This document shows, piece by piece, positions 3,001 through 51,478 of a stretch of 64,000 bases of DNA. The notes beneath the pieces were generated by a model. That model was not told where the DNA came from. It searched no databases and saw only the letters and a program-made list of their open reading frames with translations. Position 1 is the stretch's first letter. Each line of letters opens with the position of its first letter. Origin of the DNA: Macrostomum lignano (taxonomy: Eukaryota); NCBI GenBank assembly GCA_002269645.1, contig NIVC01000217.1:186001-250000 (forward strand), in the 5' to 3' direction. Both the position numbers and the translations under genes were made by a program.

Positions 3001-6000
3001 GCACATCTGACACATTCAGTTTGGCGCATCTGACACATTCAAATTGGCACATCTGACACATTCAGTTTGTCACATCTGACACATTCAGTTTGGCGCATCT
3101 GACACATTCAGTTTGGCACATCTGACGCATTCAGTTTGGCACATCTGACACATTCAGTTTGGCACATCTGACACATTCAGTTTGTCACATCTGCCACATT
3201 CAGTTTGGCACATCTGACACATTCAGTTTGTCACATTTGACACATTCAGTTTGGCGCATCTGACACATTCAGTTTGTCACATCTGACGCATTCAGTTTGG
3301 CACATCTGACACATTCAGTTTGGCACATCTGACACATTCAGTTTGTCACATCTGACACATTCAGTTTGGCGCATCTGACACATTCAGTTTGGCGCATCTG
3401 ACGCATTCAGTTTGGCACATCTGACACATTCAGTTTGTCACATCTGACACATTCAGTTTGGCGCATCTGACACATTCAGTTTGTCACATCTGACGCATTT
3501 AGTTTGGCACATCTGACATATTCAGTTTGGCACATCTGACACATTCAGTTTGTCACATCTGACACATTCAGTTTGGCACATCTGACACATTCAGTTTGGC
3601 GCATCTGACACATTCAGTTTGGCGCATCCATCTGACACATTCAGTTTGTCACATCTGACGCATTTAGTTTGGCACATCTGACACATTCAGTTTGGCGCAT
3701 CCATCTGACACATTCAGTTTGTCACATCTGACACATTCAGTTTGGCACATCTGACACATTCAGTTTGTCACATCTGACACATTCAGTTTGTCACATCTGA
3801 CACATTCAGTTTGTCACGTCTGACACATTCAGTTTGGCACATCCATCTGACACATTCAGTTTGTCACATCTGACACATTCAGTTTGGCACATCTGACACA
3901 TTCAGTTTGGCACATCTGACAAATTCAGTTTGGCGCATCCATCTGACACATTCAGTTTGGCACATCTGACACATTCAGTTTGTCACATCTGACACATTCA
4001 GTTTGGCACATCCATCTGACACATTCAGTTTGGCACATCTGACACATTCAGTTTGGCACATCCATCTGACACATTCAGTTTGGCACATCTGACACATTCA
4101 GTTTGGCACATCCATCTGACACATTCAGTTTGTCACATCTGACACATTCAGTTTGTCACATCTGACACATTCAGTTTGGCACATCTGACACATTCAGTTT
4201 GGCACATCTGACACATTCAGTTTGTCACATCTGACACATTCAGTTTGGCACATCCATCTGACACATTCAGTTTGGCACATCTATCTGACACATTCAGTTT
4301 GGCACATCCATCTGACACATTCAGTTTGGCACATCTGACACATTCAGTTTGTCACATCTGACACATTCAGTTTGGCGCATCTGACACATTCAGTTTGGCA
4401 CATCTGACGCATTCAGTTTGGCACATCTGACACATTCAGTTTGGCGCATCTGACACATTCAGTTTGGCGCATCTATCTGACACATTCAGTTTGGCACATC
4501 TATCTGACACATTCAGTTTGGCGCATCTGACACATTCAGTTTGGCACATCTATCTGACACATTCAGTTTGGCGCATCTGACACATTCAGTTTGGCGCATC
4601 TGACACATTCAGTTTGTCACATCTGACACATTCAGTTTGGCGCATCTGACACATTCAGTTTGGCACATCTGACACATTCAGTTTGGCACATCTGACACAT
4701 TCAGTTTGTCACATCTGACAAATTCAGTTTGGCGCATCCATCTGACACATTCAGTTTGGCACATCTGACACATTCAGTTTGTCACATCTGACACATTCAG
4801 TTTGGCACATCCATCTGACACATTCAGTTTGTCACATCTGACACATTCAGTTTGGCGCATCTGACACATTCAGTTTGGCACATCTGACGCATTCAGTTTG
4901 GCACATCTGACACATTCAGTTTGGCGCATCTGACACATTCAAATTGGCACATCTGACACATTCAGTTTGTCACATCTGACACATTCAGTTTGGCGCATCT
5001 GACACATTCAGTTTGGCACATCTGACGCATTCAGTTTGGCACATCTGACACATTCAGTTTGGCACATCTGACACATTCAGTTTGTCACATCTGCCACATT
5101 CAGTTTGGCACATCTGACACATTCAGTTTGTCACATTTGACACATTCAGTTTGGCGCATCTGACACATTCAGTTTGTCACATCTGACGCATTCAGTTTGG
5201 CACATCTGACACATTCAGTTTGGCACATCTGACACATTCAGTTTGTCACATCTGACACATTCAGTTTGGCGCATCTGACACATTCAGTTTGGCGCATCTG
5301 ACGCATTCAGTTTGGCACATCTGACACATTCAGTTTGTCACATCTGACACATTCAGTTTGGCGCATCTGACACATTCAGTTTGTCACATCTGACGCATTT
5401 AGTTTGGCACATCTGACATATTCAGTTTGGCACATCTGACACATTCAGTTTGTCACATCTGACACATTCAGTTTGGCACATCTGACACATTCAGTTTGGC
5501 GCATCTGACACATTCAGTTTGGCGCATCCATCTGACACATTCAGTTTGTCACATCTGACGCATTTAGTTTGGCACATCTGACACATTCAGTTTGGCACAT
5601 CTGACACATTCAATTTGTCACATCTGACACATTCAGTTTGGCACATCTGACACATTCAGTTTGTCACATCTGACACATTCAGTTTGTCACATCTGACACA
5701 TTCAGTTTGTCACGTCTGACACATTCAGTTTGGCACATCCATCTGACACATTCAGTTTGTCACATCTGACACATTCAGTTTGGCACATCTGACACATTCA
5801 GTTTGGCACATCTGACAAATTCAGTTTGGCGCATCCATCTGACACATTCAGTTTGGCACATCTGACACATTCAGTTTGTCACATCTGACACATTCAGTTT
5901 GGCACATCCATCTGACACATTCAGTTTGGCACATCTGACACATTCAGTTTGGCACATCCATCTGACACATTCAGTTTGGCACATCTGACACATTCAGTTT

Positions 6001-6633
6001 GGCACATCCATCTGACACATTCAGTTTGTCACATCTGACACATTCAGTTTGTCACATCTGACACATTCAGTTTGGCACATCTGACACATTCAGTTTGGCA
6101 CATCTGACACATTCAGTTTGTCACATCTGACACATTCAGTTTGGCACATCCATCTGACACATTCAGTTTGGCACATCCATCTGACACATTCAGTTTGGCA
6201 CATCCATCTGACACATTCAGTTTGGCACAACTGACACATTCAGTTTGGCACATCCATCTGACACATTCAGTTTGGCGCATCTGACACATTCAGTTTGGCG
6301 CATCTGACACATTCAGTTTGGCGCATCTTAGACATTCAGTTTGGCGCATCTGACACATTCAGTTTGGCGCATCTGAGACATTCAGTTTGGCGCATCTGAC
6401 ACATTCAGTTTGGCGCATCTGACACATTCAGTTTGGCGCATCTGAGACATTCAGTTTGGCGCATCTGACACATTCAGTTTGGCGCATCTGACACATTCAG
6501 TTTGGCACATCCATCTGACACATTCAGTTTGGCACATCTGACACATTCAGTTTGGCACATCCATCTGACACATTCAGTTTGGCGCATCTGACACATTCAG
6601 TTTGGCGCATCTGACACATTCAGTTTGGCACAT
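1..6633. repeat. 23-bp tandem minisatellite (ACACATTCAGTTTGGCACATCTG) with 27-bp variants; continues off the left edge, probably intronic in scribble
   Basis: Continuous array with recurrent variants (GGCA/GGCG/GTCA; CTAT or CCAT 4-bp insertions). It ends at ...CAGTTTGGCACAT near 6633. Confidence 0.97.
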
Positions 6634-7274: not shown

Positions 7275-7878
7275 TGGTTTTGGCGCCACGAGGCACTCAT
7301 TTTGGCGCCTTTTATACACTCATTTTGGCGCCGCAAGGAACTCATTTTGGCGCGGCAAGGCACACATTTCGGCGCTTTCAGTCAGACACTCATTTTGGCG
7401 CCTTTTATACGCTCATTTTGGCGCCGCAAGGAACTCATTTTGGCGCGGCAAGGCACACATTTCGGCGCCTTCAGTCAGACACTCATTTTGGCGCCTTCAG
7501 TCAGACACTCATTTTGGCGCCTTCAGTCAGACACTCATTTTGGCGCCTTCAGTCAGACACTCATTTTGGCGCCGCAAGGCACTTATTTTGGCGCCACAGA
7601 CACTCATTTTGGCGCCTTTTAGACACTCATTTTGGCGCCTTTTAGACACTCATTTTGGCACCACAGACACTCATTCATAGGCGCCGCAAGGCACTCATTT
7701 TGGCGCCACAGGAACTCATTTGGGCCCACAAGGCACACATTTTGGCGCCTTCAGTCAGACACTCATTTTGGCGCCGCAGACACTCATTTTGGCGACGCAA
7801 GGCACTCATTTTGGCGCCGCAAGGAACTCATTTTGGCGCCTTTTAGACACTCATTTTGGCGCCGCAAGGCACTCATTT
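7275..7878. repeat. Degenerate ~20-26-bp minisatellite with constant core CACTCATTTTGGCGCC
   Basis: The core recurs throughout the interval, separated by short recurrent linkers (TTTTAGA, GCAAGG, TTCAGTCAGA, ACAGA). Confidence 0.9.
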
Positions 7879-7985: not shown

Positions 7986-24329
<16,344 letters not shown>

Positions 24330-26663: not shown

Positions 26664-29600
26664 ATGTCCATCCATTTGGAGGGAGTTGAATTGGACGATA
26701 TCGATATTGAAGCTGAACAGGAAGAAGTCCGCGATGTCGTGACGTGTACTACCGCTAAAACTGTATATCAAATAAATGACGCCACCGATGGTAACCAAGT
26801 AGAAGATGACAATCGAAAGACCAAAATTAAAGAATTGCATAAAAAGCTTTTCTATTATGCTAAAAATCTTGAATTTGAAAAAGCCTTGAAGCATCTCACC
26901 GAAAATACAAAAGAATTTGATGAAGAATACAGCGAAATCAACCAAGTCAAAGACACTGAGAGAACTGCCGTGCACTATGCGGCCAATGATGCAGAAGGTG
27001 AGCAGCTTTTTCAACAGTTGATTGCCCTACAAAACTACAGCGGATTGTCAAACTCACCAGATAAATCTGGTCGCACGCCCATGCATCTTTCGGCCAGGCA
27101 TCACAGTGAAAAGCAGTTCAAGGCAAACTTCGGGATGCCTCTGTCTGACTCGAAACTTCAGATGACTGATGTAAACGGTGCAACCCGTTTGCACTACGCG
27201 GCTAGAAATGAAAATTGTTGCGATATTTTCAAGACGGTCATCGAGTCTGTGCCAGACTGTCTAATGTGGCGGAGGAAGGACAATGTCACTGTGCTCGACA
27301 TTTTTATGCGTTATGCCGAGAAAGGCATTGAACAACTGTTTGATGAAGATTGGCGCGGTCTGAATGCACTACGAGACGCCATAAAAGATGTGCGGAGGTG
27401 CAGAGTAATCGCAAGTACACTTGCATCCACTGGGCGGCAATTAGCAGTGACCCGAGAAAACTATTTCTTCAAAAAGCGATCGATGCTTTAGAAAGCGACG
27501 CAAGTTGGAAGTACTTGACTTCTCTAGGGTCGGATAAGGTGACTCCACTCCATATTGCTGCCACTGATTGCAATGAAGAAACCGCTAAGTGGCTTCTGTA
27601 TAAACTAAACAATGAGAGAAGTCTTGAAGATCTGAAGGACTTTGAAGGCAACACTGTGCTACACAAGGCAGCTTCTAATAAAATGTCGCTGGCCACATTT
27701 CTTGACTACCAAGACAAATTAAAACATCCACCGCGAACCCCACATCCATATTTTACATGGCACAACAACTTTGGCAAGACCGTGCTTCACATAGCCTTAG
27801 AAATGTGCAGTCCTGCAACTCTGAAGACGCTTCTAGAGACCATTGAAAGCTCAGATTTGGAACGTTTGGTCAAGCTTCAAGACAAAGAAAAAAATACAAT
27901 GGCACACGATGCCGCAAAGAATGAGAGTAGCGAGGTGCTGCAGATCCTGGCAGATCATCTTGGAAGCTGGAATTTTCTTGCCTGGCGGAACAGCTCAAAG
28001 CAGTCCGTTTTGCACTTTGCTGTGAAGCACTATGGAAATATCGACGCGCTACTTGGAAAAATTAAGAGATTGAAAACTGAATGGACACTTAATTACGTTG
28101 ATAACGACGGGAATACTCTGCTTCATTCCTTGTTCCAGACCAACAGAGACGTAGATGATGTGGAAGCGTTCTGGAAGGCGGCAGAAAGTCTCGTCAATTC
28201 AAGGCTGGTGTCGATCAATTTGCAGAGAATAATCTCGGACAGAATTGCCTGGCCACCGCCACAGCGGACAGTCGCATCATCTCAAAGACACTGGCTCAGT
28301 ACACTGCACTAAGCGAGCACTGCCAAGAAATGCTTCGAAGCTTTCTCATTAGCCCAACTGGTTTGCATGCGGTTCATGTATTTGCTGCAAGGCACGACCT
28401 GAAGCAGCTTGCTGAACCTCTCGCTAAACTGTCGAATCAACAAGTTAAGGATCTACTGCGCCTCCCAGTGACTCAAGCGCACCGCAGCAGTGGTGCAACG
28501 GCCTTACACTTTGCCTGCAAGGCGGGTAATCAAGAGAATATTAGATACCTAATGAGTCAGGGTCTTCAATTGTCTGACGAAACAGACTCCGGTTTGTCTT
28601 GTGTTGACTTTGCCGACGCTAGCGAGAAACTAGATGAACTCATTGATGCAGTATTTCCTGATGAAGAAGATTGCGATGAAGACGCCGACAGCAACTATGA
28701 CGACAAGGCTAGCGAAAGATCTAGAGAAATCACACGACAGAGTTCGCTTACCGACGTTAACTTCATTCGTTTATTAGACAAAAGAACTGGAGCTCTCAGG
28801 CTCCCAAGTCGAACAAAAGCTAAAGTGTCTGGCATCTATTGAGGCGTCAATTGCGTCAGAAGATCTTAGTGCCAAAGAGCAGAACAAGTCGAATGAAAGA
28901 AGCGATATGAGTATCTTGATAAAAGCAATTAAGTCCGACTCCCCAGAGATCTACAGGTGCGCACTGAAACTGTGCCGGGTCACAGCAGAGACCGAGGCAG
29001 ACTTTCCGGAATTTTACAGAGAACGGCTTTTTGACATAAGCAATGAATATGAACTAGGAAATGTTTGCAATAGGTTTTTAACAATTCCATTCAACGAAAC
29101 TTCAGAATTATCAATAATCGATGCAGCTGTCTGCCTTGACAAGATAGACATTCTTATCGATCTTGTGCTCACTCGGCAGTTTGACCTGATTCCTGCATGC
29201 ATAAATCTGCTCATTCAGCTGCAGCCGAGAATCGCTAAATCGGAGGGCAAGTCCGAACAGCTTCAGCTGCTGTACAGCAAAGTTATCAGTGTAGCCATGA
29301 ACGCTCTTGACGCACTGTATTCAAACGCTGACGAGGAAGAAAGACAACTTTTGTTCCAGTACATAACTGGCTCGCTATGGGACGATGATTGCGAGACGAC
29401 TGGTCCCAAGTTTCCGTGCCGAATGGAAAATGGCTCGACTAAACCCTACACCCTAATGGAAATGATTGAGGAAGCGGGCGATGGCGATCTGTTTGCCAGC
29501 GACTGCCTACATAATCTGATTGAATCCGAGTGGAGCAACACCTATTCCCGCTATCGCAGAAATTGCTGCAAACGCAAATTCTCGGTTAAGCCAAGGATAA

Positions 29601-31049
29601 AATTTTGGATTCACCTGATCTCCTTTCTAGCATACAACGTTTTTATCGCGTGGTACATAATGGATTTGCCTACGACTTTCAAGTTCTGGCCTGCAGATTT
29701 AGTCATGATAGCTTATCTTCTTTCATTTACTTTGCAAGAAGTTCTGGACATCTGCACTCGAAGCAAAAGAAGACGTGCCAAAATATGTGGCATTGAGATA
29801 AAAAAATGCCCCGTGTACTTCAAGGATGTCCTCAACCTACTCGACTGTTCCGCCTTAATATTGATGTGGGTCGGGCTGCTGCTGAAGCTTGCCATGTAGG
29901 GCTGCATCTTCGACTATGTCACAGGGGTGGACAGCTCCTCCATGTGCAGCGAGACCAACTCAACGGCCTATCAGGCACTCTTCCGCGGCGGTACGTCAGC
30001 TGATCGAACGTGGACCCAGCCGACTCCGTACAGCGCTTACGCCTGCCAGATGGTTCTGAGCACCGCGTTCCTGCTCTGGGGGTTTCGATCTGTCGCCTTC
30101 CTCGGCTACTCGGAGCGAATCGGTCCAGTGGTGTCCATGCTCAGGACTTTGATCATCCAGGACTTGATTCCTTTCTCTGTCATTATTGTAATCATATTTT
30201 ATTCGTTCGGAGTTTTCTTCTTCAACCTGCTGTATCCGGTTGTCACCTCGACCGAAGCTGACAGAAGCGCGTCTGACTACAGCTGGCATGCCTTTCTGCA
30301 GGTGTTCATGCTGCCGCTAAACTTGCTCTTCACCAACTTTGACGTTCTTCCCACTGAGACGGCTAAAGATAAGGATCAGGTACTGGGAGAAGTGGCGCAC
30401 CACCTTGGTTACAAGTGGTTCAGCAGAGTTATGATGTTCGTCTTCCTGCTGCTCTCGAATATCGTGATGATAAACTTGCTGATCGCCCGGTTCAGCCTGA
30501 CTGTCAGCCGGATGGACAGCAAGTCTTTGGGAACCTGGAGAAAAAGAAATATGGAACTATTGCGTGAATATCAGAGCTACAGTCCGCTTCCTGCTCCGAT
30601 TTCTTTTCTGCACTACCCTATAAAAATGGTATCGTGGTGCATTAAAAAGAGAAATGATGATAATAACGAGCAAAACAGGCTTTTCCCCGAAATTAAGGTA
30701 AGTCTTTGTATTCCATTGAATTGCAAAATTGAGCGGTAAATGTATGAGTGATCAAGAAGTACTTGTACTTTTGATTATTATTTTCTAGGATGCGTGGAAC
30801 AACGAATCCGATTATCCGGATAATTACATCGAATTTTTGTTGTTCCAAGCCAGACAGTTCAGACGAATTCGACCGCAGCTGGCCCGGGTGGTGACCAGGA
30901 ACAAGAGCGACTCGGAAGCTCTGGTAGCTCACGTGGAGAACCTGGTTTCCACTGCGAACCGCGACCTACACGATCGGCTGGGCCAGCTAGAGGAGGAAAT
31001 CAATCGAAAGTTCGCGTTGCTGCAGGAAGCGATCAGTAAGAAAAAGTAG
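26664..31049 (+). pseudogene. Ankyrin-repeat TRP cation channel with TRPM-like TM/TRP domain; ORF disrupted (pseudogene or assembly errors). Exons 26664-30697 and 30789-31049; ~1431 aa if repaired
   Basis: About 14-15 ankyrin motifs (RTAVHYAA, RTPMHLSA, YTCIHWAA, VTPLHIAA, NTVLHKAA, KTVLHIAL, QSVLHFAV, ATALHFAC and others). Six TM segments, then S6/TRP helix MINLLIARFSLTVSRMDSKSLGTWRKRNMELLREYQSYSPLPAP. Frameshifts near 27383-27386, 28185-28200 and 28780-28783, and an in-frame TAG at 29897-29899. Intron AAG|GTAAGT...TTTCTAG|GAT of 91 nt. Confidence 0.75.
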
Positions 31050-33485
31050 TAGCAAGATTCCTTGTTGTATCAGAAGCAGCTGATGTCTGCGAGTGTGAAA
31101 GAAGACGTACTGAAGTGCTTTGTAGAGTAGATTTTTTCTGCTTCGTGATGTTGAAGACAGTTTCTTTGTTTTTTTTCACAGCGTCTTAAAAAATGCGCGA
31201 TTTTACAAAAGTAGCTAGCTAAACTAACATTTTGTTTGTGTTGCATAACTTTTTAATTTACATTAAAGTTTACCACTTGATATACCATTTCTTAAACTAT
31301 CTGGTTCCTTGATGTGGATTAAGAGTTTTTTTAAAAAGAGTTACTTGTCTATACTTCTCCGATGAGAATTTAGGCGTGTAGATCATACAATACAGCATCT
31401 TTAACGAGGATTTAAATCAAGATTACCTAAAATAAAATGATTTAAAATGACTCGTAATCCACTCAAAGCATGCCTATATAATGAGGTCAATATATTCGGT
31501 ATCCAGGATGCGTTACCCAGTTGCACAGGTTGCACTTATGTTTATATTGTTACTCAATGCGAATTTTATATTTAAATTTTTGCTTGATTTTTAACAAGCT
31601 AATATTTATGAATCAAAGTTCCGACAATTTTCTAAACTTTTCTATCAGTCTATCGAGACATTCTGGACGTCAAATAACGTAAATTTTTTTTGGTAAATTT
31701 TCCTCTAAAATTACGTGTATTTGATGCTCATTTAAACTGACACTCTATAGGCTGTGCCTTCTGTGGACTAACTAACAGATATTTCAAATAGGACTAACTA
31801 ACAGATATTTCAAATAGGACTAACTAACAGATATTTCAAATAGGACTAACTAACATGTCCATGGCTAACTAAAAAAATGAATTCAACAATCGTGAACGCT
31901 TCATTATTCAATATTACGTTTTTTCATTGGACATTTAATTTTATTACTACCTGGTGTGTTCAGTCCTAAAACCTTTTAACATCGTTTAAGTACAAGCGTA
32001 TTTTTAAAAACTGAAATAGACCTTAATTGACAGTTTTTTCGAGCACTTCAGTTAATTAAATAAATATGTAGTGTGTGATACTATAAACCTTTTTGTGAAC
32101 TTAGTGTCTTCGCGTAGAGTTTTGATGGATTAATTTACATGTAAAAATGAATTACCCGGCTAATAGACACAACACCTGGCGTGCAAAAGACTATTCGATC
32201 CTCAGGCGTAGGAACTTGTGGCGTACAGCTACTGAAAACTTTAATGTGTGTAATGAATTTAAAACAAATCTCAATGTGTTTTCATTTCAATTAGCTTTAT
32301 TATCTTATTCAGCGCGGGGGCACGGATATTGGATGCTCAGCAACATCGAAAAGTCGCCATCACAGAAGATTCCGTCTGTGGTCGCCACTTTTGAGAGTGC
32401 AGGTAAAGTCTCTCAATCTTTGCGAGTGACGCAACTTAGCTACGCCACGCGGCAGACTTGAGTTCAGGAATGAAATGGGGGGAGCGGCGTGCGAGGCTTG
32501 GACGGATTAAAGCTAGCCCGATCAGTTTTCTCGTATCTTTTATTTCAGAATAGTCCAAGAGAAATTGCTCACTGGCGTATAGAGTGGCGAGTTTGCAATG
32601 TTTCTGAGTATATTAGCGCTCGCAGTAGATTTTGCGACCGTATTTTTTGCCCCACTGCTTGCTCGTCTTTGCGCACAGTTGTATACCATTGGACTGAGAA
32701 CCTGAGTTCTGTTCTGAAAGTTCTGTCTGAGAGCAGTGCAATAAATTTTTTGACTATTTTGTTTTGCGCCCATCCACGTGAGCGCTCGTGTTGTACTCGT
32801 AACGTTGGTCAATAAGTAAGCTCTAAAAATTTACAAGGTAGAGCAGATTGCCTAGTCAGGCAAGACACCGCGCACTTGTGACGATAAAGTTGAAAAAGTG
32901 AAGCCAACGACCGGCCCGAGAGAAAGATGGCATGCCCCCCCCCCCAAAAGGGCCATCAATTTTATGGTATTCGAAGCAATCGTATAATTCAAGTGCGACA
33001 GGGTTGGGGCGAGCGACAGAGAGAGACACAATAGCACAGCACTAGTACAGCGAGCCATTTATGAAAGTGACATTATTCAAAGATTGCAGTAGGTATACAC
33101 TTGCTGTATTCATGACTAGGGTAATGTTACTGTACCTGTCTCGATCGAACCGAAGCCCATTCTCTTTACTGAGTTCAAATAGACAAAATGCAGATAGCTC
33201 AAACAAAGCTGAAGTTCAGGGTATATTTTTCTCACAGAGCATACAGTGCACAACAACAGTCAGTAGTGTCTCCCTCCACGCAATTTGACATGATTCGCGC
33301 TCTCAAGACTGCTTAAAAATTCTGTGGAAACTTCAAAATTGCTAATTATTAAATTTAATGTTCCAATTTACTTTGCAATTTACAGCAAGTTGGGTAACTC
33401 GTGGCTTGACTTATGATGGGAAGTTTTTGATTTGAATTTACAAGTACTGTCTGCCAGTGTATAGCGGCTTTTCAGTACATGTAGG

Positions 33486-33669
33486 GCTGGCGCCCCTGGT
33501 GCTAAAGCTCCTGGTGCTAAAGCCCCTGGTGCTAAAGCCCCTGGTGCTAAAGCCCCTGGTGCTAAAGCCCCTGGTGCTAAAGCCCCTGGTGCTAAAGCCC
33601 CTGGTGCTAAAGCCCCTGGTGCTAAAGCCCCTGGTGCTAAAGCCCCTGGTGCTAAAGCCCCTGGTGCTT
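33486..33669. repeat. 15-bp tandem repeat (GCCCCTGGTGCTAAA) x ~12
   Basis: Near-perfect array. Confidence 0.95.
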
Positions 33670-34739
33670 TAGACATTGGTTAACTTTTGTGCCGCATTAG
33701 GGGGGAGTTAACCGTTGCTGAGTGAATGCATATTCGCTATGCATGCCTGGAAGAGAATACTTTAAGGCTGGGAATTGCTGCTTGAACTTTTGACCGAGCA
33801 GTGGTCTTACTGGGGACCATAAAAGCACCGTTTTTATATTTTATCATTGCGTGCACTGAGATGGCGCGACTTAATTTATTGTCACTTTACTCGTGTTTGC
33901 GCAGTTGTACTATATGGGACTGAGCCTGAGAACTTACGAAAGTTCTGTCTGAGACCCGCGCAATGTGTTGTTTACTCTTTCTTTGCGTCCACCCACAGGA
34001 GCGCTCGTCTTGCAACTTGAGTCAGTGAGTAAAACTCTGTAATAGTTGCACAGTAGAACAGCTTACCAAGTCAGACAATTACACCGCGCACTTGCTACGG
34101 TACACTGTAGAGTTCAGAATTCGTATCAAACGACCGGCCGAGGAAAGGAAGGCATGCCCACTAGGCATCAATTTTACTATACTCACAGGTTTAGCTACGC
34201 GCAGCATTTAATGCAAATGTACGGCAGGGTTAGTTGCGAGATGGCGTGATTGATGTACGTGCGTTAGAGAGAACTGGTTAGTTTGGGACAGACTGTGATT
34301 TATGACAGTCCAAAACCGTGGCTCATTCTTCTCTTTACAGAGTTCAAATGAACAAAACGGTAGCAAAAAAGCTGAAGTTCTCTTTTTCTCACAGTATAAT
34401 AGGAGTCCGGTGGGGGGGGGGAGATCCACTCATCCAGCCGTTGTTCATTTTTGTCGTCGGCTTTAAGTCGGCTTTCTACGAACAAGATATTTTCTGTCGT
34501 AAGTTTTGCCTTTTCAACTGTATTATTCGAAAATTTGAATGGCTCGTAATATTGTGTTGCTGAGTACATTATTCTTGTACTTGAAGGACGACCCTAGGCT
34601 AAGTAAGCTACAATAGTTCATGAGTAAGTTAATCTACACAGCAGGTTAATCTGTCTTCTTATTTACTATAAGATAGAAGTCTTACACCTAAACCTAAACG
34701 TATTGTGAAAGTTGAATAAATTGGAGTAATACAGTCTAG

Positions 34740-35345
34740 TGCTGCTAAAGCCCCTGTTGCTAAGGGCCTGTTTCTGTTGCCCCTATTGCTGGTGCCCCTG
34801 CTGCTGGTGCTCCTGTTGCTGGTGCCCCTGTTGCTAAGGCCGTGTTGCTAGTGCCCCTGTTGCTGGTGCCCCTGTTTCTGGCGGCCCTGGTGCTGGGGCC
34901 CCTTGGTGCTAAAGCCTCTGTTGCTGAAGCTCCTCTCTGTTGCTAAAGCCCCTGTTGCTGAAGCTCCTCTCTGTTGCTAAAGCCTCTGTTGCTAAGGGCC
35001 TGTTTCTGGTGCCCCTATTGCTGGTGCCCCTGCTGCTGGTGCTCCTGTTGCTGGTGCCCCTGTTGCTAAGGCCGTGTTTCTAGTGCCCCTGTTGCTGGTG
35101 CCCCTGTTTCTGGCGGCTCTGGTGCTAAAGCCCCTTGGTGCTAAAGCCTCTGTTGCTGAAGCTCCTCTCTGTTGCCAAAGCCCCTGTTGCTGAAGCTCCT
35201 CTCTGTTGCCAAAGCCCCTGTTGCTGAAGCTCCTCTCTGTTGCTAAAGCCATGTTGCTGAAGCTCCTCTCTGTTGCTAAAGCCATGTTGCTGAAGCTCCT
35301 CTCTGTTGCTAAAGCCATGTTGCTGAAGCTCCTCTCTATTGTTAA
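34740..35345. repeat. Compound GC-rich repeat related to the 15-bp unit (GCCCCTGTTGCT...), with an internal ~245-bp duplication and a ~30-bp sub-array
   Basis: The block starting GCTAAGGGCCTGTTTCTG occurs near 34758 and again near 34991. TGTTGCTGAAGCTCCTCTCTGTTGCTAAAGCC is reiterated. Confidence 0.85.
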
Positions 35346-36312
35346 AGCCAGGGATCACCAGGGATCACCAGGGATCCTCTTGATGACAGTAGCGTTGAAG
35401 TATCTTTGATGGAAGCTTTCGTTTCCTGGAACCTGCGACCCTTTGGCTAGCGTATAATCGAGGTGAAAAATTTCAGATCTTTGATGCAATTGTATAAGTT
35501 AGCCAAAATAGAGCCCGATCAGAGCTGGACAGTATGAGTATATTCTGTACAGTATGAGTATCCAAAAAAATAATTATTTAGTACCGGGGCTTACTACCGA
35601 ATCGTCCAGACTCCATCATCTTGAAACCAGTCGGAGACCCAGTTTACAGTGAGGTTGGCATTACAGCTAAAATAAAAAAGCGAAAAATTGCAAAACTGTC
35701 AGCATGGAAAACCAGCAAAATCGATCAAAACACGCAAAGCCGGTGTGTGAATGAACTGGAATTTACGAGACACTGGAGACAAAGAGTAGAGAAATCTGCA
35801 AAACTGAATCACTTTTCATACAACTTCAAATGGTACATCTCAGCCTAAAAGTAGCCCCATGTGATAAATTCGATCATGATGTATCAGATAAAGGTTTAAA
35901 TGAAAAATACTAAGAGAAGGAAGTACTTTACCTAATGATTTAAGAAGATCGTATTTTTACATGATAAAATAGGCTCAGAAAACAAATGAGTGGAGCCGCG
36001 CCATTTTAAAGGTTTTTGGGCATAGGACATGTACAATTCTACGTAGGATATAAAATTGACATAGAATCCTAATTTTATAAACGAAAAGCTCTCTCGAAAT
36101 TACGAGTACTACGAGATATATGCCAGTTTGCAAAGATTAGACCGTTTTATTTCAAGTTCTCATATCCCAGTAAATACTCGTATTACTTTGCAAAGATTAC
36201 TTTGCAGTAGCAGAGGCAATATTCAACATTATAAATAGCAAATTCACACATCAAATTGCAGGTCCTGTAAAGCGCGTCAGTCATTTCACAATAAATTTCG
36301 ACTTTAAGAATA

Positions 36313-39021
36313 ATGGCCAACTCTGGCATTAAGGCTGGCGCCACTGAGACACAGGAAGACAAGCTGCAGGGCTTGCGTGGAGATGTAGAAACTCTGCTCC
36401 GCGTCATCGTGAAAGATCTTCCTGAGGAGTATCGTCAGGCTCGACAACAAAATACGATCACCCATGAGACAGAAAAAAAGTTAGTTGAATTAATCAAGGC
36501 TAAAGATCCAATCCTCATCCTCAAGGCCAAGCTTTCCCAATCAGAAAATACATCTGGAAGCTTTGATTGTAACAAGCTTTGGAAGAAAAAATTCGACGAA
36601 TTCTCCGAGCTCTCCATAATCAACGTGGCTATCGCTATCGACAAAGTGGACATTCTGCTTGAGCTGGTTCTCTCCAGACGGCACGACCTGCTGCCCGCTT
36701 GCATCACTTTGCTTATAGAATTGAGACCGAAAATTGCATCAAAGAAAGGGAATGAAAAGAAGCTGAAAGAGCTATGCGCTGACGTTTCAAACTTGGCTAT
36801 GAAATGCCTTGACGAGCTCTACTCCAGAGCAAAAAAAGAGGGGCAGAAGCAGCTGCTCTTTGGCTACATTAAAGGATCGATTCCGGCCAATGATCGCGAC
36901 ACCAAAGGCCCAAAGTTCCCATGCCAGCTAGGCGCAAACACACTGAAATATTTTACTTTGTTGGAGATGATAGACATGTGTGGAGAGGGAGATCTGTACG
37001 CCACCGAGTGCTTGCACAGGTTGATCGATGAAGAATGGGACCCACCTGAAGCCGCTTGTCCGTGTTGTGGAGCGCAATCCAAGAAAGCCAACTGTAATTG
37101 TGACGATGGTCCGACAAAAGGGAAAAGTCACAAGGAATCTAACGAAACTGAAGGCAACGAAGTTCAATCACGTGAAGAAAGTTGCTTCCTAAATCGACGC
37201 GTAAAGCCGAAAATTAAATTTTACGTTCATCTTTTCTCTTTCATAACCTTTAACATCTTCTTCGCCTGGTACATTATGGACTTTCCGAGAACGTTTCGAT
37301 ACTGGCCAGTAGAAATCATTCTGGCAGCCTATTTCCTGTCCTTTACTTTGCAAGAAGTTCTGGAAATCTGCAAAAGAAGCAGAATCGATAGTCTTTACTT
37401 GTGCAACTTTAAAGTAAAGTGCCCCGTGTACTTCAAGGATGTGCTCAACCTACTCGACTGTTTCGCCTTGATATTGATGTGGGCTGGGCTGCTGCTGAAG
37501 CTTGCCATCTGGGGCTGCGTCACAGGCGGAAACCGATCCTCGCTATGCAGCGAGACCAACTCAACGGCCTACCAGGCACTCTTCCGCGGTGCGTCAGCTG
37601 ATCGAACATGGACCCAGCCGACTCCGTACAGCGCTTACGCCTGCCAGATGGTGCTGAGCACCGCGTTCTTGCTCTGGGGGTTTCGATCTGTCGCCTTCCT
37701 CAGCTACTCGGAGCGAATCGGTCCGGTGGTGTCCATGCTCAAGACTTTGATCATCCAGGACTTGATTCCTTTCTCTGTCATTATTGTGATCATATTTTAT
37801 TCGTTCGGGGTTTTCTTCTTCAACCTGCTGTATCCGGTTGTCACCTCGACCGAAGCTGACAGAAGCATGTCTGACTACAGCTGGCATGCCTTTCTGCAGG
37901 TGTTCATGCTGCCGCTAAACCTGCTCTTCACCAACTTTGACGTTCTTCCCACTGAGACGGCTAAAGATAAGGATCAAGTACTCGGAGAAGTGGCGCACCA
38001 CCTTGGTTACAAGTGGTTCAGCAGAGTTATGATGTTCGTCTTCCTGCTGCTCTCGAATATCGTGATGATCAACTTGCTGATCGCCCGGTTCAGCCTGACT
38101 GTCAGCCGGATGGACAGCAAGTCGGTGGAAATCTGGAGAAAAAGAAACGTTGAACTGCTTCGCGAATACCAGAGCTGCAGTCCCGTGCCCGCGCCGCTCT
38201 CCTTTATTCACTACATCTACAAGATCTTCCAGTGGTGCCAGAAGCGGCGGAATAATGCCGTACACCCTGAAAATACCCAAGAAGGCCTAATCGAGGTAAA
38301 TTTATTCTTTTTTCGCCACTAAAACATTTTTTGCATAAATTTTCTTGCAATTTATGAAATATTGAGTCGTAAATACGGGTAGACATATATTGCAATACTG
38401 ATAAATACATAAAACTTTGTTGTTTGACGTTAGATCCTTCTGCCGCAGACACCGCAGACACTTGCGTCATATATTATACTGTGTGCACATGGGTAGCGGC
38501 AAAGCGTCCGAGCCTCTTTGGCGCAAAAGATCAAGGGTTGAATTCCTCCACAAAAGCTATGAATACTGACCAGGCGCTTGGGCTGCTTTTCATTATTATC
38601 GGAAAAATAGCAGGTGGGTTTTTACTCGAAGCGCAACGCCTTTGGTGGTGCCGTCCCGCGACCACCGGTGCAGAGGCAGTTCTGCCCACTCTGCTGAATC
38701 CTGCAGAGCACATACAAGCGCACCAATATTGTACGCAGGCACGCACTCATATACACACTCACACAGGGTGTACAGCGACCCGGAATTTCTAATTGCCAGA
38801 CGTGCACACTCTCTGCCCCCCCCCTCACTAGGAAAGTGTGCTTAGATACGTTTTAATGGTTAGGTATCATGCAAGCATTCTGGCATCTACTTTGTGGCCA
38901 ACTGTCGTCGGCGCGAGGTTTTGATTTTTGTTGTTGTTGTTGTTGTTGTTGGTGTTGTTGTTGCTGTTGTTGTTGTTGCTGTTGTTGTTGTTGTTGTTGT
39001 TGTTTTTGTTGCTGCCGCTGC

Positions 39022-39058
<37 letters not shown>

Positions 39059-39143
39059 GCTGCTGCTGTTGCTGTTGTTGTTGTTGCTGTTGTTGTTGTT
39101 GTTGTTGTTGTTTTGTTGTTGTTTTTGTTGCTGCCGCTGCTGC

Positions 39144-39180
<37 letters not shown>

Positions 39181-39642
39181 GCTGCTGCTGTTGTTGTTGT
39201 TGTTTTTGTTGTTGTTTTTGTTTTTGTTGTTGTTGTTGTTGTTGCTGTTCTTGTTGTAAGATCTTTCATGACCGATTCAAATGTACGCTCGTACTTCTAT
39301 AATGAATTCAAACAGCAAATTTCAAGTAAGTTTATGTTCATACTTACAACTGTCGCCCAGGAAACATGGTCAAAGAAACCGAAGGACTTGGAAAGTTACG
39401 AAAATTACTTGGAATTCCAAACCAAGCACTTGCAGCACATTCTGTCGCAACAGCAAAGCCGTAAATTCATGCAAGAAGTGATCGACGAGGATGTCAAGAG
39501 ATACTTAAATCATCTGGTAAAATCCGCCACTCGCGACATGCTCAGCGACATGCTCAAAGTGCTGCAGAGCTCAGTCGGTACTGATGATCCTGCTGGGCAT
39601 ATAAATATTTCAGGTGCAAATCAGACGACATCATCTACTTGA
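36313..39642 (+). CDS. TRPM-like TRP cation channel paralogue without ankyrin repeats. Exons 36313-38295 and 39361-39642; ~754 aa
   Basis: Intact 661-codon frame homologous to the post-ankyrin part of the 26664 gene. Phase-0 intron at the same position (GAG|GTAAAT...CGCCCAG|GAA). Exon 2 ETWSKKPKDLESYENYLEFQ aligns with DAWNNESDYPDNYIEFLLFQ. The start codon is not confirmed; an upstream exon via an AG at 36307-36308 is possible. Confidence 0.85.
38927..39256. repeat. (GTT)n microsatellite in the TRP paralogue intron
   Basis: GTT/GCT triplet run. Confidence 0.96.
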
Positions 39643-41526
39643 AAGAATAGATCTGATAGTAGGACATTGAGTCGGTTTAAAATATCTTTTTAAATCATTC
39701 CTTTTTTGCGGACACCAGTTATAACCATGCTCTTATTCTGACATTTTCTTCAATATATTTATCTCCTGCGTTTAAAAAAGTCCTAATAATTGAATAAAGT
39801 GGCATGCCAACGTAGACTTAAAACAGTTAGAGCTCAGGTAACTTCATGTTAGACATGTTAGACTAGGTTTGGAACGTCATTGCTTAGACTGAGAGCGGCA
39901 ACAGACAAAACGAAAAAATTCTGAGCCGTCCTAACATTCTCTCGATTTGTGTGGAATTGTGGCAGATATTGTGTGATCCAGAGAGATTGTGTGTGACCCT
40001 GATCCTATCCTGAGAGTAATCCCCTAAGAGTCCAAGGTAAGTGACCTGGATGATGAGATGTTTCATACTACGAGTAAATTCATGAGCCTCTTCACGGCAT
40101 CGATTCTCGAACCAGAATCGGTTCGGATTTCCAAGAAAAAAAGCAGTATAACTATTTAACTTTGTTGAATGTTTGACTGCCTTAACAGCCTCACTTTGCA
40201 CGATTTCTCACTTTCTTCTTGGCTATTGCCATTCAATAATCACAATTTTAAAGCACTGATATCCCTCTAGTTTAGGAGACAAAAAGTTATACTTTACAAA
40301 TTGCTTCTGGTTCTAGAACCAGAACAAGCAATATGAAGAGCCTCCATATCAACTGCTCCGACAAGTTATCGGGACGAAAATATTTTTTCTAAAATTTTTT
40401 ACTTAATTTGACAATTTTTTTATTAAAGGAAATTTTATCACTTTGAACTGTAACGCGAATCAACGTGCGAGTTTATATATATATATTTATTTTCTATGTA
40501 ACTGTTCAAGCCGTTACATGTGCCTATTAAACACAAAATATTGCGTTATATTAAGTTTTGTCACATTGACCTGCTAGCTTCTAAGAAAAACTGTCTTCTA
40601 ACAAATCTCGGAATCATATTTACTGAATAATTAGCTACTACGTTGAACTTTTTAAATTCATCAAAGTGTCTTATCAATCTATCGTGTTGTTGCGGTGTAG
40701 ATACATTTAGTTTACTAGATATATAGTAGTGTACTAAGTAGTTTTACTGTGAATTTTTTGATAACTTTATTAGATTTTTTAGAATTTTTTATTTGTAGAA
40801 GTTTCAGAATTTTTAGATTTTGGATTTTAAGTTTTTTCTGCCTTAAAAGAAATCTTTATTTCTTTCGAATTGAATAAACAATTTCACAAGTTATATTGTT
40901 ATAGCGTACTCATTAGTTGTTAATTACTCATAATATTATAGTAGTTTGAATATCCTATTTTTAATCAATTACAAAATTATCATAGTTTTATCACGATTTG
41001 TTTAATTTTTTTGTTATTTTTTATGCTTTGTTATTATTTTTTGTTATCGCTACTTTGTTTAAACTAATACAGTCCAATAATAGTAGGCAACATTGATGTC
41101 TTATATAAAGCGCACACCTGAAAATAATTATAGACGCAACTTTTTCCACCTTGCTGAACTCGTCTTTTAACTCCTGCGAACTTTTTCGTGCACGTCTCTA
41201 AAGAGCGAAGTCTACTTTTTTGTTAATATCCAAGAAGCGTGGAGCAGAGTAGAGGCGTGAAAGCCCAATAAGAAGTTCAGTGCGTGAAGCGGGAGAAATA
41301 GACGTGAATTCTTGGCGATGAAGAGTTGTGAAGACTCGGGATAGTAAATATCAGGCCGTGAAGGGTAACAGGTAAGATTAGGACATAGGAAAATTTGTAG
41401 ACAAAGCCCATGTACTTTAGGAAATATTAAAAATATTACAAAAGAAGCCGTGAACGTTAGGTAGTATATGGCCCACCACAGGACACCACTGCAGAATTTA
41501 ATTCAGTAATCACGCTAGCGGATGGG

Positions 41527-42137
41527 GAACCGGAAGCTGAATAGGGATAGGTGAACCGGAAGCTGAATAGGGATAGGTGAACCGGAAGCTGAATAGGGAT
41601 AGGTGAACCGGAAGCTGAATAGGGATAGGTGAACCGGAAGCTGAATAGGGATAGGTGAACCGGAAGCTGAATAGGGATAGGTGAACCGGAAGCTGAATAG
41701 GGATAGGTGAACCGGAAGCTGAATAAGGATAGGTGAACCGGAAGCTGGATAGGGATAGGTGAACCGGAAGCTGAATAGGGATAGGTGAACCGGAAGCTGA
41801 ATAGGGATAGGTGAACCGGAAGCTGAATAAGGATAGGTGAACCGGAAGCTGGATAGGGATAGGTGAACCGGAAGCTGAATAGGGATAGGTGAACCGGAAG
41901 CTGAATAGGGATAGGTGAACCGGAAGCTGAATAGGGATAGGTGAACCGGAAGCTGAATAGGGATAGGTGAACCGGAAGCTGAATAGGGATAGGTGAACCG
42001 GAAGCTGGATAGGGATAGGTGAACCGGAAGCTGGATAGAGATAGGTGAACCGGAAGCTGAATAGGGATAGGTGAACCGGAAGCTGGATAGGGATAGGTGA
42101 ACCGGAAGCTGGATAGAGATAGGTGAACCGGAAGCTG
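41527..42137. repeat. 26-bp minisatellite (GAACCGGAAGCTGAATAGGGATAGGT) x ~23
   Basis: Highly homogeneous array ending 100 bp from the first tRNA gene. Confidence 0.96.
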
Positions 42138-48707: not shown

Positions 48708-48972
48708 GGCGACGCATTATGCTATACGCCTAACATAAAACTTTCCTCCCTTATACACAGGATTGCCATATAACCATATAACCATTCCGCTTTATTAGTT
48801 TTATTGATTTTGGCTTTTATCTATTTAGCAGCCGACATTATATTACGTTATGCTGCTCGTGCCTAATTCCATCAAAATTAACTAAATAAACAGGCTAAAT
48901 GTTCCCATTTAAAACTTTTCATTTACCTTCAATAGAAAAAACCTAGTGACGCTATTTTAACATCGCAACTCC

Positions 48973-51012
<2,040 letters not shown>

Positions 51013-51478
51013 TTCTTATCTGTCTCTTTTTTAAAATACATGCTTGTCTCATTGTGCGTAATTCATAAAAAACGCAGCCGAAACAGCGAGTCCTTAAGAG
51101 CGTACTACTAAATCAGTTAGGGACGGTGGACAGAAACCTTCCTCGTCACAAACTTAGATGATTTTTTATCGGCGTGACGTTAGAGTGCGTATGTATTATT
51201 ATTTTTTGAAACGGCTTACACATTTCCCGACCGTCAAAGCAAGTTTGCAATGAGAATTGGAGCTCGTTACCCAACTTTTATAGTTGACCGAGCCCACGCG
51301 AAACGACCGTGGATAATTAAATGCGGAACGATTTCAAAGTAATTTTGCTTGGCGAAAAAAAATAATTGGCAAGAAGCCAGAGCGGAGAGCCTACGGACGG
51401 CTGATGACCGAAATAGAAAAAAAAATTAGGAAAACAGAAACAAGCTTCCAGCTTCCAAGATGAAAGCTAATTACGAAG

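What the first reader, a model, noticed from the sequence alone, without database searches (positions are those of the whole stretch)
26664..31049. Ankyrin-array N-terminus fused to a TRPM-type channel body
Seen: ~14-15 ankyrin repeats, a TRPA1-like number, precede an acidic linker, a helical region and 6 TM segments. Established: TRPM channels have MHR domains rather than ankyrin arrays, and end S6 with NLLIAMF...WKFQR..LI.EY...P.P.P. TRPA1 ends with NLLIGLAVGDI. This protein reads NLLIARFSLTVSRMDSKSLGTWRKRNMELLREYQSYSPLPAP, with a pre-S1 LMEMIEEAGDGDLFASDCLHNLIESEW resembling MHR4. Inference: a chimeric or divergent TRP subfamily with a TRPA-like sensor on a TRPM-like pore. I cannot tell whether it has been described.
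Basis: partly seen in the sequence, partly recalled or inferred. Interest (0 to 1): 0.7.

Follow-up and report, generated by a model that had tools for sequence, protein, structure and literature searches.

The report
Broken flatworm ankyrin–TRPM-like channel gene
This is a decaying copy of a Macrostomum lignano (flatworm) ion-channel gene that joins about 15 ankyrin repeats to a TRPM-type channel body; that design is real but was already noted in flatworms for the meclonazepam target TRPM_MCLZ, and here it belongs to a large undescribed gene expansion.

Summary
Window 26664-31049 (+) encodes about 15 ankyrin repeats, an acidic stretch, an MHR4-like helical linker, S1-S6, a TRPM-type TRP helix and a C-terminal coiled coil.

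This copy is almost certainly a pseudogene. It has three frameshifts and a TGG->TAG stop after S3. A second, 97%-identical M. lignano copy carries different lesions.

The channel body matches only TRPM structures, by sequence (E down to 6e-27) and by fold (top 50 Foldseek hits). It lacks the TRPM MHR1/2 (SLOG) domain.

The gene belongs to a large expansion seen almost only in M. lignano: about 35 clusters at 50% identity, many with ankyrins and channel in one ORF. The nearest outside relatives are flatworm ankyrin-bearing "TRPM-like" channels, probably the TRPM_MCLZ group. Published work already describes that group as TRPM-like with N-terminal ankyrin repeats and as a functional cation channel.

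So the architecture is known. The Macrostomum clade is a divergent, apparently undescribed variant: a conserved LLFTNFD pore motif, and ankyrin-less paralogues, one intact 5 kb downstream. A gene-conversion tract links the two neighbouring genes.

Interest is moderate to low.

The parts
26664..27389 (+). Coding segment A (frame 0): N-terminus and ankyrin repeats 1-4
   Evidence: Translation; ANK HMM and motif hits; PDB ankyrin matches.
27382..27403 (+). Frameshift 1 (frame 0 to frame 2). It is shared with the second M. lignano copy L001. It lies at or next to an AAAA run, so a shared homopolymer miscall cannot be excluded.
   Evidence: Sequence. There is no indel difference from L001 here. The corrected translation aligns collinearly with intact P0011/P0156 across the site.
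27395..28193 (+). Coding segment B (frame 2): ankyrin repeats 5-11
   Evidence: The AF2 model has 7 helix pairs (pLDDT 75). Foldseek matches ankyrin-repeat domains.
28194..28198 (+). Frameshift 2: a 5-bp insertion (TCAAT), specific to the window copy
   Evidence: L001 lacks these 5 bases and reads through as AAESLVKAGVDQF.
28201..28821 (+). Coding segment C (frame 1): ankyrin repeats 12-15, including the one canonical repeat GATALHFACKAGNQENIRYLMSQG (28492-28563), plus the acidic stretch at 28654-28704
28823..28824 (+). Frameshift 3: a 2-bp (AG) deletion, specific to the window copy
   Evidence: L001 has the extra AG and reads RTKAKECLASIEAS in frame, matching the paralogues.
28826..29596 (+). 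Helical linker, with an MHR4-like core from about 29102 to 29533 (SELSIIDA...LTRQFDLIPACINLLIQL ... LMEMIEEAGDGDLFASDCLHNLIESEW)
   Evidence: hhalign of this family's linker against the linker of the flatworm ankyrin TRPM-like group: 95%, E 3.8e-8. That group against TRPM MHR3/4: 99.9%, E 7.7e-32. Foldseek aligns the whole P0004 model to TRPMs.
29597..30598 (+). Channel core: S1 29597-29662, S2 29699-29752, S3 29816-29896, S4 30041-30103, S5 30164-30238, pore helix/filter LLFTNFD 30293-30343, S6 30419-30496, TRP helix plus SPLPAP 30530-30598
   Evidence: TRPM alignments; coordinates.
29897..29899 (+). Premature stop TAG just after S3. L001 has TGG here, and the paralogues P0001/P0002 read W at this residue.
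30026..30505 (+). Gene-conversion tract shared with the downstream paralogue. DNA identity is 95-100% here, against 45-60% in the linker and 58% by 30626.
   Evidence: Sliding identity profile.
30698..30788 (+). Phase-0 intron (GTAAGT...TTTTCTAG, 91 nt)
   Evidence: Sequence. Gene 2 has an intron at the same position.
30789..31049 (+). Last exon: the W-x-x-E-S-D-Y-P...F-Q motif and the C-terminal coiled coil (30921-31034), ending in TAG TAG
   Evidence: The C-terminal part aligns with the TRPM C-terminus.
36313..39642 (+). Neighbouring intact paralogue without ankyrin repeats: exon 1 36313-38295, intron 38296-39360, exon 2 39361-39642; 754 aa; 99% identical to P0002

Best explanation
The locus is a non-functional (pseudogenised) copy of a Macrostomum lignano gene.

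Intact relatives of this gene encode a tetrameric six-transmembrane TRP cation channel of the melastatin lineage. In them the N-terminal MHR1/2 (SLOG) ligand-binding domain of canonical TRPM is replaced by a solenoid of about 15 ankyrin repeats.

Shown:
- One collinear coding region: ankyrins, MHR4-like linker, S1-S6, TRPM-type TRP helix, coiled coil.
- No SLOG domain.
- The TM region and the overall fold match only TRPM.
- Membership of a large expansion seen almost only in M. lignano. Its closest outside relatives are the ankyrin-bearing flatworm 'TRPM-like' channels, probably the TRPM_MCLZ group.
- Two or more lesions in this copy that are hard to ascribe to sequencing error.

Inferred for intact members:
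- Assembly through the C-terminal coiled coil.
- Gating transmitted from the cytosolic ankyrin/MHR4 ring to the TRP helix.
- Retained Ca2+ dependence through the cavity of the S1-S4 voltage-sensor-like domain. The ligand positions read E..D in S2, N..D in S3 and E in the TRP helix.
- Unusual permeation, because the filter reads LLFTNFD instead of the TRPM YGE/FGQ.

This copy would end after S3 and cannot form a pore. Its pore region has nevertheless been homogenised by gene conversion with the intact ankyrin-less neighbour.
For: Architecture:
-, with models and Foldseek.
- Single-ORF relatives. P0007 is one 3678-nt ORF in L002. P0021 is one 1537-aa protein in NCBI's annotation of a 5.1-kb contig filed under a bacterial MAG.
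- The gene 1 ankyrin region aligns collinearly with P0011/P0156 (residues 58-673, 34% identity, E about 1e-75).

TRPM affinity:
- phmmer: TRPM1 1.9e-18.
- Profile search: top 60 hits all TRPM, 6e-27 to 6e-13.
- Foldseek: top 50 all TRPM, 820-940 aligned columns.
- Linker hhalign chain.

No SLOG: jackhmmer finds it in the canonical TRPMs and never in this family.

Family and taxonomy:
-.
- Neighbour-joining bootstrap support: Macrostomum family 100, flatworm ankyrin group 91, the two together against the SLOG-TRPM and TRPS-like sequences 63.

Lesions:
-. The window copy alone has the +5 bp insertion, the -2 bp deletion and TGG->TAG.
- L001 has its own -1, +1, -60 bp and roughly 1.5-kb deletions.
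- Codon differences between the two copies are 36 non-synonymous to 20 synonymous.
- Public gene models of the locus (P0003, P0009, P0026) all skip or start after the lesions.

Literature:
- TRPM_MCLZ has ankyrin-like repeats, lacks MHR1/2-SLOG and gives currents in HEK293 cells (PMC10788528, PMC11731825, PMC12861061).
Against: Assembly error is not fully excluded.
- M. lignano assemblies do contain indel errors. P0007's ORF in Mlig_3_7 is cut by a 1-bp shift that is absent from models based on another assembly.
- The shared frameshift at about 27390 sits at an AAAA run. The AG loss is in an AGAG context. Either could be an artefact.
- That leaves the 5-bp insertion and the TAG as the solid lesions.

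Phylogeny is limited.
- Grouping with the TRPM_MCLZ-type clade has only 63% support in an unrooted distance tree.
- Mean distance to that clade (1.60-1.66) is barely below the distance to canonical TRPMs (1.71).
- The S. mansoni TRPM_MCLZ sequence itself was not in my set. Calling the second group 'TRPM_MCLZ orthologues' rests on taxon, on a database 'TRPM7' label matching the earlier 'TRPM7-like' classification of TRPM_MCLZ, and on the doubled channel part in Opisthorchis that matches the published exon 3a/3b duplication.

No expression or functional data exist for any family member.
Confidence: 0.75

Rival explanations
1. The gene is intact and functional in the animal, and the three frameshifts and the stop are assembly or polishing errors in a repeat-rich long-read assembly.
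For: - Indel errors are demonstrable in an M. lignano assembly.
- Frameshift 1 is next to an A4 run, and frameshift 3 is in an AGAG context.
- The coding sequence is otherwise open and well conserved.
- Identity with the neighbouring gene is 95-100% in the pore region.
Against: - A 5-bp non-homopolymer insertion and a G->A substitution that creates TAG are not typical long-read errors.
- An independent copy in another assembly carries further lesions, including 60-bp and roughly 1.5-kb deletions of S1 and of S5 through the C-terminus.
- The non-synonymous to synonymous ratio of 36:20 indicates relaxed constraint.
- Three independent public gene models avoid the lesions.
Confidence: 0.13
2. One reading: a new TRP subfamily created by fusing a TRPA-type ankyrin sensor to a TRPM-type pore.
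For: - The repeat number (about 15) is in the TRPA1 range.
- TRPA1 ankyrin domains are among the structural matches.
- The family is very divergent from canonical TRPMs and lacks SLOG.
Against: - The ankyrin matches are generic. Gankyrin, EHMT1, ankyrin-B/G, DARPins and NOMPC all score better than TRPA1.
- The ankyrin-for-SLOG design is shared with a flatworm-wide clade that keeps clear MHR3/4 homology.
- That clade is already described in the literature (PMC12861061), so this is neither a local chimera nor undescribed.
Confidence: 0.05
3. The ankyrin part and the channel part are two adjacent genes that merely look continuous.
For: - Ankyrin-less family members exist: gene 2 in the window, and two tandem copies in L003.
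- Some database models contain only one half of the protein.
Against: - There is no stop or start boundary between the last repeat and the linker.
- P0007 (L002) is one uninterrupted ORF across both parts. P0021 is annotated as a single protein spanning both parts.
- More than 10 full-length models show the same order of parts.
- The last canonical repeat and the 'LRLPDR' linker motif are conserved together.
Confidence: 0.03

Closest known systems
Flatworm TRPM_MCLZ ('TRPM-like') channels, e.g. Schistosoma mansoni Smp_333650, the meclonazepam target
   Same: - N-terminal ankyrin repeats in place of MHR1/2-SLOG.
- TRPM-type S1-S6, TRP helix and C-terminal helices.
- Few exons.
- Restricted to flatworms.
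- The linker is homologous by hhalign (95%, E 3.8e-8).
- The two groups join in the unrooted tree at 63% bootstrap.
   Different: - The Macrostomum family has about 15 repeats, mostly degenerate. My ANK HMM detects only 1-7 repeats in members of the probable TRPM_MCLZ group.
- Only an MHR4-like remnant is detectable, whereas that group has clear MHR3/4 (E 7.7e-32 against TRPM).
- The pore motif LLFTNFD is different and conserved.
- TM-region distance to the group is almost as large as to canonical TRPMs.
- The family has expanded massively and includes ankyrin-less paralogues.
- This particular copy is disabled.
Canonical TRPM channels (TRPM1/3, TRPM2, TRPM4/5, TRPM7, TRPM8)
   Same: - Best sequence and fold matches for the TM region, TRP helix (W-R-K-R...EY...SP.P.P) and coiled coil.
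- The Ca2+-ligand positions of the S1-S4 domain are retained (alignment to nvTRPM2, 6co7).
- MHR4-like pre-S1 motif.
   Different: - No MHR1/2 (SLOG), Nudix or kinase domain.
- An ankyrin array instead.
- The selectivity-filter motif is not YGE/FGQ.
- The family falls outside the SLOG-TRPM cluster in the tree.
TRPS (TRP soromelastatin, ced-11-like)
   Same: A sister lineage of TRPM with a similar TM core. A SLOG-undetected clade that may be TRPS appears in the same search (P0070, P0076, P0079 and others; bootstrap 100).
   Different: TRPS is reported to lack ankyrin repeats and to be SLOG/Nudix-linked (PMC7306681). The linker of this family shows no hhalign match to that clade (E 0.46).
TRPA1 / TRPN (NOMPC)
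   Same: A long N-terminal ankyrin solenoid ahead of a six-TM TRP channel.
   Different: The TM/TRP region is far weaker against NOMPC (8.8e-6). TRPA1 is absent from the 60 listed sequence hits and the top 50 fold hits for the channel body.

Membership tests
TRPM (canonical melastatin) | N-terminal MHR1/2 (SLOG-like) domain | tested here: not met
   jackhmmer seeded with a TRPM SLOG region hits the canonical TRPMs in the set (E 1e-14 to 1e-181). It hits none of the Macrostomum family or the flatworm ankyrin group. The N-terminus is an ankyrin solenoid.
TRPM (canonical melastatin) | MHR3/4 helical domain before S1 | tested here: inconclusive
   Direct hhalign against TRPM gives only E 0.0096 (probability 4%). 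Homology is supported through a chain: this family to the flatworm ankyrin group at 95%, then that group to TRPM at 99.9%. Foldseek also aligns the whole P0004 model to TRPMs. Only the MHR4-like part is detectable.
TRPM (canonical melastatin) | TRPM-type S1-S6, TRP helix and C-terminal coiled coil | tested here: met
   phmmer and profile hits are exclusively TRPM among those listed. The AF2 model has a long C-terminal helix (residues 737-818).
TRPM (canonical melastatin) | Placement inside the TRPM clade in a rooted phylogeny | tested here: inconclusive
   The NJ tree is unrooted and has no TRPC/N/A/V outgroup. The family sits outside the SLOG-TRPM cluster.
Flatworm 'TRPM-like' / TRPM_MCLZ group | Ankyrin repeats at the N-terminus, no SLOG, TRPM-like channel body | tested here: met
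   The published description is in PMC11731825 and PMC12861061.
Flatworm 'TRPM-like' / TRPM_MCLZ group | Clustering with TRPM_MCLZ orthologues to the exclusion of other TRPMs | tested here: inconclusive
   The split has 63% bootstrap support. Smp_333650 itself was not available. Naming the second group as TRPM_MCLZ orthologues is an inference.
Flatworm 'TRPM-like' / TRPM_MCLZ group | Activation by meclonazepam; cation current on heterologous expression | not testable with these tools
   Needs an experiment.
TRPA | TRPA-type TM region and C-terminus | tested here: not met
   No TRPA1 among the 60 listed sequence hits or the top 50 fold hits for the channel body. TRPA1 matches only through generic ankyrin repeats (8e-6).
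TRPN (NOMPC) | 29-repeat ankyrin spring plus TRPN TM core | tested here: not met
   About 15 repeats. The TM match to NOMPC is 8.8e-6, against 1.9e-18 for TRPM1.
Pseudogene | Disabling lesions relative to intact homologues, relaxed constraint, independent decay in sister copies | tested here: met
   Three frameshifts and one nonsense codon. L001 has further lesions, including two deletions. Non-synonymous to synonymous differences are 36:20. Caveat: one or two of the small indels could be assembly errors.

The most novel reading that the evidence does not exclude
The flatworm ankyrin-bearing TRPM-like lineage (the TRPM_MCLZ type plus this Macrostomum expansion) may not be a derived TRPM that swapped SLOG for ankyrins. 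It may instead be an older, separate TRP family that kept the ancestral ankyrin N-terminus. That would be a living intermediate between ankyrin-type TRPs (TRPC/TRPN) and the ankyrin-free TRPM/TRPS pair. It would contradict the inference that ankyrins were lost before the TRPM-TRPS split (PMC7306681).
Probability: 0.12. Interest if true: 0.75.

Novelty: new variant of a known kind. Interest (0 to 1): 0.35.

Why it matters
Ankyrin-bearing TRPM-like channels are drug targets in parasitic flatworms (TRPM_MCLZ).

A free-living laboratory flatworm with dozens of divergent relatives offers three things:
- A natural series for asking what the ankyrin ring does on a melastatin-type pore. It includes natural ankyrin-less versions and a distinct conserved pore motif.
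- A way to ask whether the ankyrin N-terminus in this lineage is ancestral or regained.
- A way to see how tandem paralogues and their pseudogenes exchange sequence.

The specific locus, being a pseudogene, matters mainly as an annotation warning. Public gene models of it are mis-spliced or fused.

Tried and rejected
- **Profile against PDB for the linker.** No match upstream of S1, so MHR4 homology had to be tested by hhalign and by fold.
- **Direct hhalign of the family linker against TRPM and against the TRPS-like clade.** Not significant. Only the chain through the flatworm ankyrin group works.
- **jackhmmer from a consensus ankyrin repeat.** It finds only 1-7 repeats per protein, because the repeats are degenerate. 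The count had to come from relaxed HMM thresholds, motif and spacing and from the AF2 model.
- **Second word-indexed homology search, with a profile.** Only 10 hits, all M. lignano. It added nothing on other taxa.
- **The 14-nt GT...AG stretch at 27390-27403 read as a micro-intron that would restore the frame.** Rejected as far too short for a spliceosomal intron. The verified introns here are 91 and 1065 nt.
- **Search for ankyrin exons upstream of gene 2, 31050-36312.** None found.
- **Search for an intact copy of gene 1 at the P0001 locus, L003.** That locus holds only two ankyrin-less copies.
- **DNA-level comparison of L002 with the window.** No similarity; the paralogues are too diverged.
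- **No ML tree software was available.** The phylogeny is therefore a Scoredist-type NJ tree with 100 bootstraps and no outgroup.
Full report
**What is in the sequence**

Window 26664-31049 (+) holds one long coding region that changes frame several times. The pieces are:
- frame 0, 26664 to about 27389;
- frame 2, about 27395 to 28193;
- frame 1, 28201 to 28821;
- frame 2, 28826 to 30697, interrupted by an in-frame TAG at 29897-29899;
- a canonical 91-nt intron at 30698-30788 (GTAAGT...TTTTCTAG, phase 0);
- a last exon, 30789-31049, ending in TAG TAG.

The conceptual product is about 1430 aa. Its parts, in order, are an N-terminal tail, about 15 ankyrin repeats, an acidic stretch (FPDEEDCDEDADSNYDD), a helical linker, S1-S6, a TRP helix followed by SPLPAP, and a C-terminal coiled coil.

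**Ankyrin array**

- The N-terminal half hits ankyrin-repeat proteins in the PDB: NOMPC 1.1e-14, ankyrin-1/2 1.3e-14, and TRPA1 only 8e-6.
- A relaxed ANK HMM finds 10 repeats. Five more degenerate units fit the motif and the 36-43 aa spacing.
- The uninterrupted piece 27395-28192 was modelled (pLDDT 75, pTM 0.74). It has seven helix pairs.
- That model matches gankyrin/Nas6p, EHMT1, ankyrin-B/G, NOMPC and TRPA1 ankyrin domains at TMq 0.55-0.67.

The similarity is generic ankyrin, not specifically TRPA.

**Channel body**

- phmmer of the C-terminal half against the PDB gives TRPM1 1.9e-18 and TRPM3/2/7 about 1e-13. Chlamydomonas TRP1 reaches 2.8e-7 and NOMPC 8.8e-6. No TRPA or TRPC entry is among the 60 listed hits.
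- A family profile raises this to 6e-27, and all top 60 hits are TRPM. The match covers only S1 onwards.
- An AF2 model of the paralogue P0004 (last ankyrin repeats to the C-terminus; pLDDT 65, pTM 0.60) finds only TRPM structures in the top 50 Foldseek hits. E values run from 4e-10 to 2e-8, with 820-940 aligned columns, so the linker region is included.
- The linker itself is recognisable only through a chain of profile comparisons. This family against the flatworm ankyrin TRPM-like group gives 95%, E 3.8e-8. That group against canonical TRPM MHR3/4 gives 99.9%, E 7.7e-32. The direct comparison is not significant.
- No MHR1/2 (SLOG) domain is detectable in any member, although the same search finds it in the canonical TRPMs of the data set.

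**Origin and family**

Of the 31 clusters I looked up, every close homologue that carries a name is from the free-living flatworm Macrostomum lignano, with one exception described below.

L001, a contig of assembly GCA_002269645.1, is a 97%-identical second copy of the locus and its flanks. The window is therefore M. lignano.

An exhaustive HMMER search found about 35 clusters (at 50% identity) with E < 1e-36. Many are full-length proteins of 1200-2100 aa with the same order of parts.

Fusion of the ankyrin and channel parts is not an annotation artefact:
- P0007 is one uninterrupted 3678-nt ORF.
- P0021 is a single 1537-aa protein in NCBI's annotation of a 5.1-kb contig filed under a 'Kangiellaceae bacterium' MAG.
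- The frameshift-corrected ankyrin region of the window gene aligns collinearly with intact P0011/P0156 over residues 58-673.

P0021 is the one exception to the M. lignano rule. It is evidently a contaminating contig from a related animal.

**Relation to known channels**

The next tier of hits (E about 1e-34 to 1e-26) is ankyrin-bearing, SLOG-less channels from other flatworms: Opisthorchis, Schistocephalus (labelled 'TRPM7' in its database) and Dicrocoelium. Further M. lignano genes belong here too. Canonical TRPMs come after them.

I built an unrooted NJ tree of S1-TRP from 105 sequences, 298 columns and 100 bootstraps.

| Grouping | Bootstrap support |
|---|---|
| Macrostomum family | 100 |
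| Flatworm ankyrin group | 91 |
| The two together, against SLOG-TRPMs plus a SLOG-less TRPS-like clade | 63 |

The literature already describes this second group:
- The authors suggest the label 'TRPM-like'.
- The Opisthorchis protein P0032 has a doubled channel part. This matches the published exon 3a/3b duplication and supports the identification.
- Himmel et al. (PMC7306681) state that ankyrins are absent from TRPM and TRPS and were probably lost before the two split.

The general design is therefore known. I found no paper describing the Macrostomum clade.

**State of this copy**

I compared the window with L001. Over 3.8 kb there are 67 substitutions and 9 indel events.

| Lesion | Window copy | L001 copy |
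|---|---|---|
| Frameshift at about 27390 | present | present (shared) |
| TCAAT insertion at 28194-28198 | present | absent |
| AG deletion at 28824 | present | absent |
| TGG->TAG at 29897-29899 | present | absent (TGG) |
| -1 at window position 27650 | absent | present |
| In-frame 60-bp deletion of S1 | absent | present |
| +1 in an A run at window position 29800 | absent | present |
| Deletion of about 1.5 kb removing S5 through the C-terminus | absent | present |

The paralogues P0001 and P0002 read W where the window has the stop.

Codon differences between the two copies are 36 non-synonymous to 20 synonymous, which indicates relaxed constraint.

Public gene models of the locus all dodge the lesions. 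P0003 and P0009 use odd micro-splices, and P0009 also fuses gene 1 to gene 2. P0026 starts just after the TAG.

One caveat applies. M. lignano assemblies contain indel errors. The shared frameshift lies at an AAAA run, and the AG loss is in an AGAG context. The firm lesions are the 5-bp insertion and the nonsense codon. I put pseudogene status at about 0.75-0.8.

**Neighbourhood**

About 5 kb downstream lies an intact paralogue: 36313-38295 plus 39361-39642, 754 aa, 99% identical to P0002. It starts at the linker and has no ankyrin repeats. Its intron is at the same phase-0 position as the gene 1 intron.

DNA identity between the two genes varies sharply along their length:
- 45-60% in the linker;
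- 95-100% across 30026-30505 (S4 to S6);
- back down to 58% by 30626.

This is a clear gene-conversion tract.

A paralogous locus, L003, carries two tandem ankyrin-less copies and no ankyrin gene.

**Likely mechanism of intact members (inferred)**

- They would form a tetramer through the C-terminal coiled coil.
- A cytosolic ring built from the ankyrin solenoid and the MHR4-like domain would contact the TRP helix.
- The Ca2+-ligand positions of the S1-S4 domain are retained. They read E..D in S2, N..D in S3 and E in the TRP helix (alignment to nvTRPM2). This suggests Ca2+-dependent gating.
- The pore motif LLFTNFD is conserved across the family and replaces the TRPM YGE/FGQ. Selectivity is therefore unpredictable.

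**Verdict**

- The architecture is already described for flatworm TRPM_MCLZ.
- The Macrostomum expansion is a divergent, undescribed variant.
- This locus is a decaying copy.

Noticed in passing
window 36313-39642 (+): An intact paralogue with no ankyrin repeats: 754 aa, exon 1 36313-38295, exon 2 39361-39642. Its 1065-nt intron contains a (TTG)n microsatellite. It matches UniRef A0A1I8J5P4 (P0002) at 99%. This natural 'ankyrin-deleted' version of the channel lies 5 kb from the broken ankyrin-bearing copy.
   Followed up: partly
window 30026-30505 and about 37620-38105: A gene-conversion tract. The S4-S6 region of the pseudogene and of the neighbouring gene is 95-100% identical in DNA, while flanking coding sequence is 45-75% identical. 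The 1.5-kb deletion in L001 starts inside this tract.
   Followed up: partly
P0021 / P0207 (NCBI MEE4247282.1, 5106-bp contig): A 1537-aa member of this animal channel family is deposited as a protein of a 'Kangiellaceae bacterium' MAG, and in IMG as 'ankyrin repeat protein'. This is most likely a flatworm or other meiofaunal contig mis-binned into a bacterial genome.
   Followed up: no
L002 about 7670-7680 (P0007 locus, NIVC01000620.1): The P0007 ORF ends at ...FLFMGW* because of a 1-bp shift inside S6. Frame +1 continues LVNIVMLNLLIALF..., as in models P0006 and P0008 from another assembly. This is either an assembly indel or an allelic lesion.
   Followed up: partly
L003 2306-4286 and 9830-11822: Two tandem copies (period about 7.5 kb) of the ankyrin-less paralogue P0001, with no ankyrin-bearing gene nearby.
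   Followed up: partly
Public models P0003, P0009, P0026: Database gene models of this locus are artefactual. P0003 and P0009 bridge the lesions with micro-introns or wrong frames. P0009 also fuses gene 1 and gene 2 into one 1526-aa protein. P0026 begins just after the premature stop.
   Followed up: partly
window 1-6633; 9940-12674; 13304-14014; 15845-16795; 41520-42137; 48972-51025; 58155-59533: The window is dominated by tandem repeats. Examples are a 23-bp satellite of about 281 copies at the 5' end, (CTGT)n/(CTGTCTGT)n arrays of up to 2 kb, and 20-26-bp minisatellites. They explain the strong AT/GC skews and the many spurious long ORFs.
   Followed up: no
window 24084-24161 against L001 1-1950: The 78-bp segment at window 24084-24161 matches overlapping positions about 27 bp apart all along L001 1-1950, so L001 carries a roughly 2-kb tandem array there. 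The two copies of the locus differ greatly in satellite length just upstream of the gene.
   Followed up: no
window 8713-9273, 15217-15800, 20120-20860 (+): ORF fragments that look by eye like exons of an LRR- and PDZ-domain scaffold protein of the Scribble/LAP type. Examples are ...[22 protein letters not shown]... and PDZ-like [11 protein letters not shown]...PGDRLLAVN / MGLSICGG...[10 protein letters not shown]. They are separated by repeat arrays. I ran no search on them.
   Followed up: no
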